This document shows positions 6,200-56,601 of a DNA stretch of 56,927 nt, piece by piece. The notes under the pieces are model-generated. The model had not been told where the DNA came from. It did no database searches and worked only from the letters and a program-made list of their open reading frames with translations. The translations under genes were made by a program, and so were the position numbers. The DNA is from Trichosphaerium sp. ATCC 40318 (Eukaryota; Protista; Tubulinea). Within the stretch, counting starts at the first letter, position 1, and every line of letters starts with the position of its first letter. The stretch spans positions 1-56,927 of the forward strand of contig JALMLS010000244.1 of NCBI GenBank assembly GCA_038496445.1. The letters run 5' to 3'.

Positions 6200-8150
6200 A
6201 GAAAAGTTCACTTTGAAGATCCGAATCCAGACGAAGTTAAGGTTTTTGTAGTAAAGTAGAAGGGCTATTTGAGATTAATTGTCTTAGTTTAGGTTTTTTT
6301 GAGTATTGTAAGGAGAGTATTGTGAAGAAGTGCTATTGTAGAAGTGCTAGCTGTTGGAGTAATCATTGGTATAGAAATACCGTGGGCTATGCGCTACCGT
6401 TACTGGTATATTGTCGTATGAGCAAGTAGAAGATATTTCTCCTCTGCTTTTATTTATTATTTTTTACTAGGTAAGCCTCGGCAAAACGTACCTAAAGAAA
6501 ATGACAGGATGCAGCATTTGTAAAAGTTGCTCTGGAACAAAACAATACCTATGAACGTAGATAAGATTGCTCCTAGTGCCTCCATGACATGCAAAGGGTT
6601 CAAGGTTGTAACTTGCATACCTAGCGTCTAAGAAATAAAATGATGTACCTTAAGCTTGAACCTCGCGGGCGTGGTCTGGGTTAATTATAGAAACCAGAGC
6701 CGAACAATCATCTTGATGACTTTTGCACCGGCTATGAAGTACATCCCTTCGCTCCCGTGTTATGTGGTCAAAAGGTCTTAGCGTGCCTCTATGGTTTACA
6801 AGTTCGTTGCTAGCACCTTCCACACACGTTTGTTGTAGAACAACTCACGGAGCTGCATGGTTTTGTGGGGTTCGTTTGATTAACCTACAAGTAAATGACG
6901 TACAATTGATCATTATCAATAAGATTCGCGGTGATTTAGTTTACAAGCGGAAGAAGGTATGCAAACTTTACTCGACACACCTATAAAAAAAAGCCTAACA
7001 GCAATGGTAACTTACTTAACCCTTCTGGTAAGTGCTCATGCAAGCACATTACCGCTGTAAGACAGGCTTGACAGACTTGACAGACCTCTTGCACTAGGTA
7101 GTAATACCTATCCCAGAAGTCGTTGTCAAAGTTGACTTCTTTGTAATACTCCTCATCAAGGAGGTAGCCGTGTTTCTCATCAAATAAATGTCTTTCCCGG
7201 TACTTGATGTCTATATCATTGGACTTACAAAAGTCTTTGTTGAGGAGCATTTCGTGGTAGTGTAAAACCTAATGCTTGTGTAAGTATAAAAAAAAAGGAA
7301 CGTACCGCGTTTCGGTGTACTAATAATCTGGACCAATTCTAAACAATCGGCTTCCAACTTGCTCAAATCGACTTTACCACCATGGCAAAGCTCGCCACGT
7401 TTTATTACTACTCTTCGCCATAATATATTGGCTCTAAGAGCGTCTCTCCGCTTGGCCTTGAGAAACGAATGCATTAACCCCCATAAACCATTGTCGTGGA
7501 ACAATAAGGAGTTCCAGCCACAAATGTCCAAACACCGAAGGAGTGGCAACCCTTCGGGTATGTCGCTTTCTAAAATTGCGAAAACAGCCATTACTGACTC
7601 GCACACCACCTCTAGCGCATGTGCAAAACATCTCCACGTAGTGCGATCCCGTGCAATATAACGGGCGACAGTTAAAAATCGCACTTTGTCTTGTAACTAA
7701 AAATAGAATTAGATAAACCACAGATACAATAACAAAGTAAACCTTGCGTACTCCGAGTCAGTGAGTGCCTTGGAACCTGTGCATCACAGAAAATGTAAAA
7801 ATCATTAGCTTGAGAAAGAACTGGCAAAAAAACTAAGCGTACATTGTAAAGCCAATAGTTTTGCTCGTGGACCATCTCTAGTTTTGTGAAATCTACCGCT
7901 GTAAGTACGTTCCACGCCAGAGAAAAAAGCGAAAAAACCAAAAAACTGATGAGAGAAAAAGAAAACAACAAAAAAACGTGCAATAAACACGTGTTACGGT
8001 TCTATTAATTCCGAATTCTTGCTTTTTTCCACAAAACACTATCTCGAGAAATAAAACGTGCAATGTACGTACCTGTTTCAGCTGCTTGCCTAAAGATGTT
8101 AATCTATCCATCCCTCATAGGTCTGGTATTCTAACGATGTTTCTTTAACT
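6200..8150 (-). CDS. HEPN-like family A member 1: two tandem domains, the second disrupted, plus a hydrophobic tail; ends approximate
   Basis: Domain 1: IPEGLPLLRCLDICGW...KRGELCHG...DCLELVQII. Domain 2: FCKSNDIDI...HLPEGL...ERRDVLHSRC...DDCSALVSIINP, with frameshifts/stops. Clear paralog of the 20.4 kb and 56 kb ORFs. Confidence 0.6.
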
Positions 8151-9145
8151 CCTATGAAAGATTAGAAATTACGATTGCAAAGGAATGAATAAAAAGCTTC
8201 ATTAAATTATTTACACGTGTTACGCGTAAATTACGTGCCTCAAAACCCTAGTATTGAGATGCTTCGGGTGTTTCTCAAGTTGTGCGTTGCCGAATAGTCA
8301 ATGTGTTTTAGTTCCTACAGAATTTGTAAGTAAGTAAACAACAAAAGAACTGAAGCTCAAACAAGCCTAGAAAATTTTGCTTTATACTAATGGCGGTTCA
8401 TGTACTATAGCCATCAGCTTTGGACTTTGATTTGCAGGAAGAGCTACTAAGCGGTGGTGGACTGATGAGATTTGAAATATTTGCCTTACTTCACGTGGTA
8501 TTTGTGATCCAAAAACCACGTGAAGCATGTATGGTTGCAAAAAAAAACTCATCAGCAAAGTGTATGAATTCTAATTCCAGTGTGAAGTTTAAAGGAACAC
8601 GATAGTACGTAGTGAGGTTTGTGTCCTTCACAAGAAGTTTAATAATCTACTAGACCTTATCAAAACAATTATGAAACTTACTGAGTTGCTCCTTCGACAA
8701 CAAATGAACCAAGCTTTAATCGTCCCTGCGCTCTACTTGGATTCCGTAAATTCTTAAGAGAAGCATTGATGTTGTACGATACTAACTTTGTTTCCGTTCA
8801 CTATCGTTTGTTTAACATTGAACTGATCAAAGATGTCATATTAAGCTTCTTTGAAGCTGTTGACATGTGCGTTTACAAAAACAACATTCAAGCACTGGCG
8901 CTGTCTAAATTGAGTCTTTCCAAGACAATGCAAGAAACACAGTTTGGAAGAGAACAGGTGATGTAGCCACTAAACAACATACCCCAATAAAAAGCAAACC
9001 TTTAAGTTGAAATTACGCACGTGATGCGCCGAAGAGCGATAAATAGAAATCCTTCAAAATGTACGTACGGCAATTACTACAACCAGTGGCATAAGTCGTT
9101 GCTAAGACTTAATTCTTAGGCCTTCCTTAAGAGTACTACGTTGCG

Positions 9146-10382
9146 ATGTCAGCACTACCACTACATATGGATTTTAACAGTGGGCTTGGCTCCTCTGATA
9201 ATCCTGTATGGCGTCGCACATGGAATTATCTACGTCGTGTATTATATTACCCCCAAATGGATCTAGAGTACACGCTATGGCAAATGATCTACCTTTGCAT
9301 CTCCCCTAAACAAGTGTACGCTTTTTCATCTAAACGGCCTTATTTAATGGTTTTTAGGTACAAAACTACAAAATACCATAAACGTAAGCGCTTTTAGAAG
9401 GTTTTTGCGTACTCATGCTGGTAGAAACAAAAAATCAATGGGCCAGAGACGACCCAGGCTTTATATGTGTACAAGTGTATTTTTTAATCGTTTCTACGAT
9501 AGCTTGGTGTATAATGATGCGTGCGTTTGCTTGACGTTGCCCAGAGTGGTTCTAAACTACGTAGGCGTTTCATTTATGCGCGGATTGTTCATAACGCTCA
9601 GTGTTGTGTTCGGTGATTATTTACTCTTCGGCGCTATTATTGCCACCATTGGATGGTACGTGAGAGTACTGAAATGTAACTGTCAAGCTTGTCATTTTCT
9701 TTTTGTTGTTTTTACCGACATAAAGAAAGTCGTGGCGAACAAGGATCTAGCTCTTACAAAAATCCAAATTTTTAATGTCATGAGAGTTGTTAAATTATTG
9801 TAGGTTTATAGCAAACAAATACATGCGTGTCTCAGGTTTACACTCAGTGGAGCAGGTACGAAAATTAACTTCATTTTCAGTTTATGAAATTCCACAACAG
9901 TTTCACTGCCTTGTTTTTTATGAACTGTCATCAAGTTAATTTATACGAATCATGTACCTACACTACTCTTGCTTATATATACGTAGGATGTGGAATGGCT
10001 CTATGCTTTTGATGTTCACTGTAATGCATTCTTTCCACTTTTTCTAATATGTCACGTGGTTCAATTTTTTCTCATTTACTTTTTGCTTGGCAATGGCATA
10101 TTTGTTACCTTCTTATCGGATACACTATACCTTGCAGCGTTTAGTTGTTATTTTTACATTACATTCAGTGGATACACAGGTACGCGATTCGCGTTTTGGC
10201 AACAAATTTATAGATGTTTTTTATTATGGTTTACTTGTCATTAACCCGTAATAGTATTGCCCTTCTTACACAAGACTGAATGGTTCTTATATCCTATTGG
10301 ATTTATGTTCTTATTCTACATCACAGCGATGATATTTGGGCTAAACTTTACTGTGATTTCAATGAACTTGTATTTTGCTTAG
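9146..10382 (+). CDS. UNC50: UNC-50 family Golgi membrane protein
   Basis: Cleanly spliced: QMDLEYTLWQMIYLCISPKQVYKTTKYHKQTKNQWARDDP...VEWLYAFDVHCNAFFPLF...YITFSGYTVLPFL. Confidence 0.95.
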
Positions 10383-10700
10383 ATTTGATTTATGTTTTAT
10401 AAAAAAACCTCAACAACGCTCTTGACATGCCTGTAAAAATTCCATACAGAGTGTTGTGTCTTGCTTGTAAATAATACTATTGCATGCCTGTGCTTTATCG
10501 TTTTGTTTGATGTACATTCAATGACTAAAGTGTAAAACATAAACGCCTGACTATTACTGTACAAACTGTTTCCCAACCGCTCTCTGACAGTTGCTGCTGT
10601 AATTTCTTGTTGGTTACTTCTTTACAGACGATATTTGACTTTTGGTTTAAAAATACGCGTAAACTTCAAACCCAAAAAACGTTGGTGTGTCAAACGCAAA

Positions 10701-55342: not shown

Positions 55343-55363
55343 GTAGTAGTAGTAGTAGTAGTA
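55343..55363. repeat. (GTA)n microsatellite
   Basis: gtagtagtagtagtagtagta. Confidence 0.9.
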
Positions 55364-55646
55364 TAGTAATGTTTAGACATTGACACAGGCTATTTTAGAG
55401 TAAGAAGAAAAGGAAACGTAACCGCAGCAGTACCGAAAGCTGCAGGACGCCAAAGCGTCAACGGCCCACTGCAATGTACGACCCCTTTTAATTAATTTTT
55501 TTTTTCAATTATTATTATTTTGCAAAAAAACACTAAATTTTGCGCCTAGATTTTGTATCTCTGACTTTTCAGAGATAGCGTTCTATCTCGCCGTTATAGT
55601 TGACGTAACGCTGGGAACTCCTTTTCCTTACTTGGTCCGTGTTGTT

Positions 55647-56601
55647 ATGCTGATGAAGTTGAAAGAGTGGTTGGACACTGGCGCCTGGAAGTTGTGCATC
55701 AAATTTGTAAACAGACCAGCATTTATTCAAGCTCAGTTTGAAATGCTGGAAGACTTCTTTGGCGCCAAATGCTCACATAGTGAGGCGCTCCAAGCTGTTA
55801 AAAGATTATCTTTTTCCCTTGGTGCAGTAGTGTCACAGCACAGATACAGGACCTTAGAGTGTACGTTTACTTTTTGTTTTTTTTTTTTTTTTTTTTTTCC
55901 AGTCTTTCCTCAAACTAATTATTTGTTAGGTCACAAAATTAACTATATTTACCGTGATGAACAGCTGTACGTACCTTTTTTACTCTTTTAAAACGACAGT
56001 ATTTTTTTTTTTTTTTGTATTTCATTTCCAAAACATCTCCTGTTGTTGCTTGTTTTCTTTTTACCTCTTACTTTGTACGCGCACGCAACGCACTCACAGC
56101 CATTAGGTTTAACCTCAAGAATGCACAATTCCTGACCAGGGAGTTTTGTAGGTCAATTAATTTTGACATTGAGTTTTCGTATAGGTACTTCCTCTTGATG
56201 AGAGAGGTGTGCCAATCGTTTCTGAAGGCTATTATGTGCTTTCAAAAGCACTTGCCAGATGACTTACCATTGCTTTGTGGCTTAGACATTTGCGGGTGGT
56301 ATAGACTATTTATTCACGACTCAAAAATGTGGCATCTGCTGGTCGTTCATATGCTCAACAATCGCAAGCAGCCTACTAAGGTATACTCGCTTTTGCGCCA
56401 AATATCAAACAAACGAGGCGATATGGTTCACGGCCGACGTGAAAATAAACAGGGCCTGCTTAACGATTGTGCTGCGCTGGCATCAATAATGACGTCAAAT
56501 CCTACTGAAGACGTGCAATCCTTAGGTAAGTCTGTTGCTTATTTTACAATCTTTACTTATACACTTGTGTAGCAATTATGGGATGTTTCAATGATAATTG
56601 A
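55647..56601 (+). CDS. HEPN-like family A member 3 (N-terminal helical exon plus HEPN-like domain)
   Basis: FCRSINFDIEFSYRY...HLPDDLPLLCGLDICGWY...QISNKRGDMVHGRREN...LNDCAALASIM; conserved terminal intron, last exon AIMGCFNDN*. Confidence 0.7.

What the first reader, a model, noticed from the sequence alone, without database searches (positions are those of the whole stretch)
6200..56601. Dispersed, expanded family of stand-alone HEPN-like RNases: a candidate protist defence/toxin system
Seen: six related helical domains at five loci, five with an RxxxxH motif: RRDVLH (6734-6751), RGELCH (7382-7399), RNDLYH (19424-19441), RGDVVH (20551-20568) and RGDMVH (56414-56431). Subfamilies A and B look unrelated at first but align around W-x5-6-D-x-K ... 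R-x-[DE]-x-x-H ... [DE]C plus a hydrophobic final helix. Known: Rx4H near the C-terminus of a ~120-aa all-alpha domain is the HEPN RNase catalytic signature (Swt1, RNase L/Ire1 KEN, Cas13, HepT toxins). Inference: an intron-containing, fast-evolving birth-and-death family of RNases interleaved with housekeeping genes, possibly acting against viruses or intracellular bacteria, or in non-self cell death.
Basis: partly seen in the sequence, partly recalled or inferred. Interest (0 to 1): 0.9.

Follow-up and report, generated by a model that had tools for sequence, protein, structure and literature searches.

The report
Amoeba paired HEPN-like gene families
This amoeba contig holds copies of two lineage-specific gene families, usually lying side by side, whose proteins look like small RNA-cutting (HEPN) enzymes. 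Similar expansions were already predicted in other amoebae, so this is a new variant of a known theme, and its function is untested.

Summary

**Family B** (B1 18938-19516, B2 40776-41313): four exons, about 135-140 aa, a small solo protein. Three weak, independent lines point to a HEPN fold:
- Two sub-threshold HEPN Pfam hits.
- HEPN-clan neighbours by language-model features.

R-N-x3-H lies at the end of helix 3, as in known HEPN domains. Half of the B paralogs have lost both R and H.

In the window only A4 (55294-56601) is intact. A3 lacks its 5' exons, A2 is truncated and A1 is frame-broken.

Each intact A gene has a B gene 0.6-3.8 kb downstream. These cassettes lie in one repeat-rich region assembled as several 86-99% identical contigs. 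About eight divergent A-like genes are dispersed elsewhere. dN/dS is 0.1-0.55. No outside sequence homologs were found.

A defence or toxin role is untested. Solo HEPN expansions in amoebae were proposed in 2013.

The parts
55294..56601 (+). A4: the only intact family-A gene in the window. Six exons (55294-55338, 55399-55475, 55550-55860, 55930-55966, 56107-56525, 56573-56601), 305 aa.
   Evidence: The spliced model gives one open frame with GTACG/GTAAG..AG introns of 47-140 nt. The same six-exon structure and intron phases recur in the C306 and C240 paralogs.
55399..55475 (+). A4 exon 2: basic segment resembling a bipartite NLS (a KKKRKR run, a spacer, then PKRQRP).
   Evidence: Translation. 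Paralogs keep the pattern KRK..(10-12)..KRxR. The NLS reading is inference from the classical bipartite consensus.
55550..55860 (+). A4 exon 3: conserved ~103-aa N-terminal domain of unknown fold.
   Evidence: It is 47-50% identical to the C306 and C240 copies and 27% to the A2-like copy. There was no Pfam, PDB, protein-database or Atlas match.
56107..56525 (+). A4 exon 5: ~140-aa all-helical HEPN-like domain. K-R-G-D-M-V-H lies at 56411-56431, at the end of the penultimate long helix.
18938..19516 (+). B1: intact family-B gene. Four exons (18938-18954, 19002-19055, 19121-19163, 19211-19516), 139 aa, with R-N-D-L-Y-H at 19424-19441.
20392..20838 (-). A3: 5'-truncated family-A copy. It holds exon 5 minus its first ~12 codons, the 42-nt GC-AG intron 20415-20456, and a short last exon ending at the stop at 20392. 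R-G-D-V-V-H lies at 20551-20568.
   Evidence: Homology to the intact C306 copy stops at 20840. Exons 1-4 are present in C306 but absent here. The intron is spliced out in RNA contig X3, which carries the C306-type variants at 20337, 20341 and 20356.
7307..7660 (-). A2: family-A exon-5 domain with R-G-E-L-C-H. It lacks ~16 N-terminal residues of the domain, and only a ~17-aa remnant of exon 3 lies upstream. Probably a truncated gene.
   Evidence: Alignment. The upstream frames show only the exon-3 tail around 7700-7760 and no exons 1-2. The C335 copy is identical.
6650..7250 (-). A1: frame-broken, mosaic family-A pseudogene. Its pieces lie in three frames (6984-7268, 6799-6879, 6653-6844), and R-R-D-V-L-H lies at 6734-6751.
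   Evidence: Three-frame translation. HMM hits to separate ORFs cover model positions 3-54, 64-80 and 94-130. The N-terminal motif is duplicated.
40776..41313 (+). B2: intact four-exon family-B gene (40776-40792, 40834-40890, 40944-40980, 41026-41313), 132 aa. R and H are replaced (Q-Q-N-D-N-M-I).
   Evidence: Spliced model. Alignment.
36186..36500 (+). Divergent B-like ORF without R or H.
   Evidence: The B-domain HMM matches it at E 0.004 over model positions 20-98. Its gene model was not worked out.
31070..32179 (-). Family-B pseudogene fragments: exons 1-2-like at 31832-32179, and exon 3 plus the start of exon 4 at 31070-31414.
   Evidence: ORF translations. DNA similarity to the B loci on C240 and C16. 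Weak HMM hit.

Best explanation
The window carries copies of two lineage-specific gene families that duplicate together as neighbouring A-B cassettes. They lie in one repeat-rich, structurally variable region of this amoeba's genome.

B genes encode ~135-140-aa solo HEPN-fold proteins. The ancestral form has the canonical R-N-x3-H at the end of helix 3.

A genes encode ~300-aa proteins made of a bipartite-NLS-like basic segment, an unknown ~100-aa domain and a C-terminal ~140-aa helical domain. That domain has R-x4-H at the equivalent position and is most likely a diverged HEPN domain.

By analogy with characterised HEPN enzymes, members with intact R and H most likely act as metal-independent endoribonucleases that need dimerisation to form the active site. 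The NLS-like segment suggests they work in the nucleus. Members that lost R and H (B2 and half of all B paralogs) would be non-catalytic partners or RNA binders.

Shown here: gene structures, paralogy, clustering, purifying selection, motif position, splicing of one copy. Inferred: HEPN fold (good for B, moderate for A), RNase activity, nuclear location, any defence role.
For: - **Paralogy and copy map:**
- **Gene models:** the six-exon A model and the four-exon B model are each conserved in three or more paralogs, with canonical splice sites and a full open frame.
- **Transcription:** an RNA contig splices out the A3-type last intron and carries the variants of the intact C306 allele.
- **Selection:** dN/dS is 0.12-0.55 where measurable.
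- **A fold:** nine HEPN chains are in the top 50, with the longest alignments (104 residues to the Swt1 C-terminal domain and to HI0074). HEPN_Swt1 and HEPN_DZIP3 clusters appear among feature neighbours.
- **Motif position:** in both models R-x4-H ends the penultimate helix and opens the loop to the last helix. PMC3710099 gives exactly this position for HEPN.
- **Canonical motif in distant relatives:** distant A-like paralogs carry R-N-E-Y-C-H.
- **A-B linkage:** every intact A gene has a B gene 0.6-3.8 kb beyond its 3' end. The A and B identity patterns are congruent, with the A2-like/B pair the outlier in both.
Against: - No HEPN Pfam model reaches its cut-off.
- Foldseek finds nothing for either model.
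- Core A has G, not a polar residue, after R.
- R and H are not the invariant residues of either family. Those are a Trp and a Cys, plus an Asp in A.
- Half of the B copies lack R and H.
- A-B homology is not significant by sequence.
- There is no activity, localisation or infection data.
- Transcription is shown for only one 3' exon junction.
Confidence: 0.55

Rival explanations
1. The proteins are non-catalytic helical-bundle proteins, either HEPN-derived or unrelated. They would serve as nuclear RNA-binding, scaffolding or regulatory factors, and R-x4-H would be kept for binding or stability rather than catalysis.
For: - The invariant residues are Trp, Cys and Asp, not R and H.
- Half of B and several distant A-like members lack R or H, yet B2 keeps an intact four-exon frame.
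- Core A lacks the polar residue after R.
- Structural scores for A are no better than for generic bundles.
- Eukaryotic Swt1's own HEPN is thought to be inactive (PMC3710099).
Against: - R and H are retained together in all seven core A sequences and in three B lineages, despite only 30-50% overall identity.
- When lost in B, both are lost together, as expected for a catalytic pair.
- HEPN chains are strongly enriched among matches to B.
Confidence: 0.25
2. The A-B cassette is a selfish or conflict module: a two-gene toxin/antidote, allorecognition or antiviral pair. Its presence varies between haplotypes.
For: - A and B co-duplicate as neighbours.
- The region exists as several diverged assemblies with indels that add or remove cassette parts.
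- One RNA-derived contig of another strain or haplotype joins 20840 directly to 18255, skipping B1 and A3, with non-canonical ends.
- There are many decayed copies, and transposon-like repeats lie nearby.
- PMC3710099 proposes defence roles for such expansions.
Against: - Neighbours co-duplicate in any segmental duplication.
- The skipping contig could be a chimera.
- Paralogs are old (dS saturated) and under purifying selection, with no sign of positive selection.
- No PADLOC hit.
- The complex prediction gave no answer.
- No infection or toxicity data.
Confidence: 0.12
3. The copies are decaying debris of a repeat-rich region, or cargo of a mobile element, with no present host function.
For: - Three of the four A copies in the window are truncated or frame-broken, and several B fragments exist.
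- The surrounding sequence holds repeats present in 10 to 25 or more copies.
Against: - Intact six-exon and four-exon frames are kept in several paralogs at 40-50% identity, with dN/dS well below 1.
- Spliced RNA exists for the intact C306 copy.
Confidence: 0.08

Closest known systems
Solo, catalytically intact Swt1/Ava_2192-type HEPN proteins of dictyostelids, Naegleria and Daphnia, including the Daphnia lineage-specific expansion (Anantharaman et al. 2013, PMC3710099)
   Same: These are small stand-alone HEPN proteins with R-N-x3-H, expanded within a protist or animal genome and proposed to be defensive endoRNases. B1's best Pfam hit, though sub-threshold, is HEPN_Swt1.
   Different: No significant sequence match to that family was found. 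Here the solo gene is paired with a second, larger HEPN-like gene. Half of the copies have lost R and H.
Yeast Swt1 C-terminal HEPN domain (PDB 4pqz)
Bacterial and archaeal HEPN toxins of HEPN-MNT toxin-antitoxin pairs (PDB 1wwp, 5yep, 8xdj, 1jog, 2hsb)
   Different: The partner here is not a nucleotidyltransferase. No NTase signature or Pfam hit was found in A. The genes are spliced eukaryotic genes, mostly convergent, and not an operon.
Cas13 and Csm6 HEPN domains (PDB 9fcv, 6tug, 4rgp, 8jbc)
   Different: There is no CRISPR context, no guide RNA, no CARF domain and no tandem HEPN within one chain.
KEN domain of Ire1 and RNase L
   Same: A eukaryotic HEPN-type RNase domain at the C-terminus of a longer protein, active as a dimer.
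   Different: No kinase or ankyrin module is present. KEN structures did not appear among the listed matches.

Membership tests
HEPN superfamily | [quoted passage not shown] | tested here: met
HEPN superfamily | The same helical core, tested for family A | tested here: inconclusive
HEPN superfamily | [quoted passage not shown] | tested here: met
   A4: R103..H108 ends helix 89-107, with a loop to helix 114-129. B1: R72..H77 ends helix 62-75, with a loop to helix 84-100. The published position was read. The motif is present in 7 of 7 core A sequences, 3 of 6 distinct B sequences and 2 of about 8 distant A-like members.
HEPN superfamily | Polar residue (N, D or H) directly after the conserved R | tested here: inconclusive
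   Met in B (R-N) and in distant A-like members (R-N-E-Y-C-H on C98 and C433). Not met in core A, which has R-G, R-S or R-R.
HEPN superfamily | Conserved acidic residue in helix 2, typically E-x3-[KR] | tested here: inconclusive
   B has E-L-N-E-K in its first long helix in 4 of 6 sequences. A has a mostly conserved E in 'EVC' of its first long helix, but without the basic partner.
HEPN superfamily | Significant sequence match to a curated HEPN model | tested here: not met
   B1 scores 16.9 bits against HEPN_Swt1 (cut-off 27.5) and 15.7 bits against HEPN_RiboL-PSP (cut-off 28.4). The other B sequences and all A sequences have no hit at E 1 or better. The genome scan with PF18731 does not recover these loci.
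HEPN superfamily | Metal-independent endoRNase activity that depends on R and H in a dimer | not testable with these tools
   This needs biochemistry. The one complex prediction (A with B) gave no answer.
HEPN-MNT toxin-antitoxin pair | Adjacent minimal nucleotidyltransferase partner gene | tested here: not met
   The neighbour of B is A. The N-terminal domain of A has no Pfam, PDB or Atlas match and no G[SG]..DxD signature by eye.
Swt1 (PIN + HEPN nuclear surveillance nuclease) | N-terminal PIN domain fused to the HEPN domain(s) | tested here: not met
   There is no PIN hit in A exon 3 at E 1 or better.

The most novel reading that the evidence does not exclude
The A-B pair is a eukaryotic two-gene HEPN conflict cassette. 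One member would be an RNase toxin or effector, and the other its HEPN-like partner or antidote, or the two would form a heterodimeric nuclease. The cassette would vary in presence between haplotypes and act in antiviral defence, allorecognition or as a selfish killer-rescue element. This would be a nuclear, spliced counterpart of bacterial HEPN toxin-antitoxin modules.
Probability: 0.1. Interest if true: 0.8.

Novelty: new variant of a known kind. Interest (0 to 1): 0.42.

Why it matters
HEPN RNases are central to prokaryotic defence (Cas13, Csm6, abortive infection, toxin-antitoxin pairs) and to animal antiviral and stress responses (RNase L, Ire1). Little is known about protist immunity.

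A family of solo HEPN-like genes physically paired with a second, larger HEPN-like gene would give a concrete, testable candidate for an RNA-targeting conflict or surveillance system in an amoeba. Its location in a structurally variable region adds to that. It would also supply two orphan families for the HEPN superfamily.

If the proteins prove non-catalytic or the region is merely decaying, the finding is an ordinary lineage-specific expansion.

Tried and rejected
- **Outside homologs:** sequence searches found none.
  - A3 domain against the 5.8-billion protein collection: nothing.
  - B alignment: 3004 word candidates, none scoring.
  - A exon-3 alignment: nothing.
  - A-domain profile against 1.84 billion representatives: only two hits, both repetitive or low-complexity proteins matched in many short stretches, which I judged spurious.
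- **Solved structures by profile:** nothing for A or A exon 3. For B only NLRC4 and Avs4 at E 0.1-1.5, which I took as noise.
- **Other libraries:** PADLOC and NCBIfam gave only noise. Foldseek against PDB gave no match at E 0.001 or better for either model. The second-look alignment of Foldseek's list for A was uninformative. The Atlas shape search for A returned unrelated membrane and enzyme folds at TM below 0.5.
- **A-to-B homology:** hhalign was not significant in two settings.
- **A with B complex prediction:** 'no answer', score 0.00. This is not evidence either way.
- **Other features:** Rfam and tRNA scans of the window were empty.
- **Rejected idea, MNT or PIN domain:** I considered that the N-terminal domain of A might be a minimal nucleotidyltransferase or a PIN domain. 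There is no signature and no hit.
- **Rejected idea, 'tandem double-HEPN gene with hydrophobic tail' at 6200-8150:** the second unit is frame-broken and mosaic, the first lacks its upstream exons, and the hydrophobic stretch is intron read-through.
- **Earlier notes:** look-ups by sequence were blank.

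
Full report
**Setting.** The window is a whole 56.9-kb contig (C260) of a ~70-Mb, intron-rich eukaryotic genome. Earlier notes of this scan call the organism an amoeba. GC content is about 38% throughout. There are very few long ORFs, and RNA contigs show introns of 42-104 nt.

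**Observation.**
- R-x4-H alone is uninformative: it occurs 158 times in the six frames.
- The motifs do sit in two real paralogous families. Family A copies match each other at E 1e-11 to 1e-111. Family B copies match at E 1e-8 to 1e-57.
- The sixth domain, without R/H, is B2 at 41026-41310. I also found a divergent B-like ORF (36186-36500) and B pseudogene pieces (31070-31414, 31832-32179).

**Gene models, family A.** Comparing paralogous loci by tblastx and reading the splice sites gave one conserved model. Family A has six exons and encodes about 300 aa:
- exon 1: a short start, M-T-T-R-D;
- exon 2: a basic segment resembling a bipartite NLS;
- exon 3: a conserved ~103-aa domain;
- exon 4: 12 aa;
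- exon 5: the ~140-aa helical domain with K-R-G-D-x-V-H;
- exon 6: a 7-9-aa tail.

Three paralogs (A4, and the copies on C306 and C240) give complete frames of 299-305 aa with GTACG..AG introns and identical phases. So A is not stand-alone.

The hydrophobic stretch after 'LGKS' in the raw ORF is intron. The 42-nt GC-AG intron 20415-20456 is spliced out in an RNA contig. That contig carries the C306-type variants at 20337, 20341 and 20356, so it comes from the intact allele.

**Gene models, family B.** Family B has four exons and encodes 132-139 aa. B1 is 18938-19516 and B2 is 40776-41313, and the structure is the same in the C16 and C240 copies. B is a small solo protein.

**State of the window's copies.**
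- A4 (55294-56601) is intact.
- A3 has lost exons 1-4 and the first ~12 codons of exon 5 relative to C306. Homology stops at 20840, where the 3' UTR of the neighbouring C2-domain gene begins.
- A2 keeps only exon 5, shortened, plus a remnant of exon 3.
- A1 is split over three frames and is mosaic.
- B1 and B2 are intact. B2 has lost both R and H.

**Genome-wide picture.**
- The window overlaps C335, C306 and C16 at 97-99% identity and C240 at 86-97%. The region is therefore assembled several times, as haplotigs or recent duplications. It also contains repeats present in 10 to 25 or more copies.
- All core A and B copies lie in this set of contigs.
- Each intact A gene has a B gene 0.6-3.8 kb beyond its 3' end, convergent in three cases and tandem in two. 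The A2-like/B pair is the outlier in both families. The cassette therefore duplicated as a unit.
- A profile search adds about eight divergent A-like domains on other contigs: C165, C74 (two), C98, C15, C433, C11 and C406. Of these, the C98 and C433 copies carry the canonical R-N-E-Y-C-H, and the others have lost H or the motif.
- Three of six distinct B lineages have R-N-x3-H. Three have lost R and H together.
- dN/dS is 0.12-0.27 for A and 0.2-0.55 for B where dS is not saturated. These are old paralogs under purifying selection, not demonstrably fast-evolving.

**Fold, family B.**
- AF2 models built from the paralog alignments are confident: A domain pLDDT 86, B domain pLDDT 85.
- Foldseek finds nothing for B.
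- About 11 of the top 50 are HEPN chains and cover nearly the whole model. They include AbiA, Csm6, AF_0298, the AMPylated HEPN toxin, SO_3165, TT1696, HI0074, the Swt1 C-terminal domain and HepS.
- The Atlas shape search lists DUF4145, a HEPN-clan family, first.
- Language-model neighbours are HEPN-clan in 9 of 10 family-bearing hits.
- Pfam gives two sub-threshold HEPN hits.

**Fold, family A.**
- Foldseek finds nothing for A either.
- The other searches are weak or blank.

**Motif position.** In both models R-x4-H ends the penultimate helix and opens the loop to the last helix. Anantharaman et al. 2013 describe this position for HEPN (PMC3710099). In both families a Cys follows H at +13.

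**A-to-B homology.** It is not significant by hhalign. The relaxed alignment is nevertheless co-linear (W, R..H and C all line up), and the A HMM's only non-A hit in the window is B1 at that motif.

**Fold odds.** I put the HEPN fold at about 0.8 for B and about 0.55-0.6 for A.

**What it is not.**
- No sequence homologs exist outside this genome in the libraries searched.
- There are no defence-library hits.
- A has no nucleotidyltransferase or PIN partner domain.
- The A-B complex prediction gave no answer.

**Interpretation.** The best reading is two orphan HEPN-type families forming A-B cassettes. Intact-motif members are probably dimer-dependent endoRNases. The NLS-like segments suggest a nuclear site of action. 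Motif-less members are probably non-catalytic partners.

A defence, toxin-antidote or allorecognition role is possible. Three things hint at it: the structural variability of the locus, an RNA-derived contig that joins 20840 to 18255 and so skips B1 and A3, and the many decayed copies. None of this is a test.

**Novelty.** Anantharaman et al. 2013 already reported solo, active Swt1-type HEPN proteins in dictyostelids, Naegleria and Daphnia and proposed them as defensive RNases. Full-text searches found nothing on HEPN cassettes in amoebae.

The finding is therefore a new variant of a known kind. What is new is the orphan sequence families, the A architecture (NLS-like segment, unknown domain, HEPN-like domain) and the A-B pairing.

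The scan has noted other HEPN-like genes on other pieces of this genome. I could not tell whether any of them is the same family.

Noticed in passing
window 21043-23195 (-): A highly expressed gene immediately upstream of A3 encodes a C2-domain, coiled-coil protein with a hydrophobic C-terminal (tail-anchor-like) segment. At least ten exons are confirmed by spliced RNA contigs from three runs. Its 3' UTR runs into the start of the truncated A3 ORF.
   Followed up: partly
window 18255 | 20840: One RNA-derived contig (run X1, with several mismatches to the window) joins 20840 directly to 18255. It skips 2584 bp holding B1 and A3, and the ends are non-canonical (GT..TT on the minus strand). This looks like a haplotype or strain lacking the pair, or an assembly chimera, rather than an intron.
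   Followed up: partly
window 1-8955, 11920-20840, 20837-28640, 37069-39972, 51454-56923: These stretches recur at 86-99% identity on contigs C335, C306, C240 and C16, with indels of 2 kb or more between them. The region is assembled several times over, as haplotigs or very recent segmental duplications.
   Followed up: partly
window 42927-44123; also 51671-52162, 28793-29321, 33575-34377: Dispersed repeats are present in about 10 to 25 or more copies genome-wide at 78-89% identity. They are probably transposable-element remnants. No long ORF is left in the 42.9-44.1 kb copy.
   Followed up: no
window 18629-18836 and 25528-25740: A ~150-210-bp element occurs in inverted orientation at these two places. 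It also occurs next to family copies on C306, C240 and C16 at 81-98% identity.
   Followed up: no
window 20415-20456 (-): A 42-nt GC-AG intron (donor GCAAGT) is used in the last intron of the A3-type gene. The A4 and C240 paralogs have GT donors at the same site.
   Followed up: yes
window 4771-5607 (-): A 278-aa ORF made of MORN repeats (Pfam MORN_2, E 5e-36).
   Followed up: no
L002 (C306) about 12080-12270 and L004 (C240), upstream of the A genes: The 3' exon of a Rab-type small GTPase gene lies just upstream of the A genes on C306 and C240. It is about 87% identical between them, so it is part of the duplicated block.
   Followed up: no
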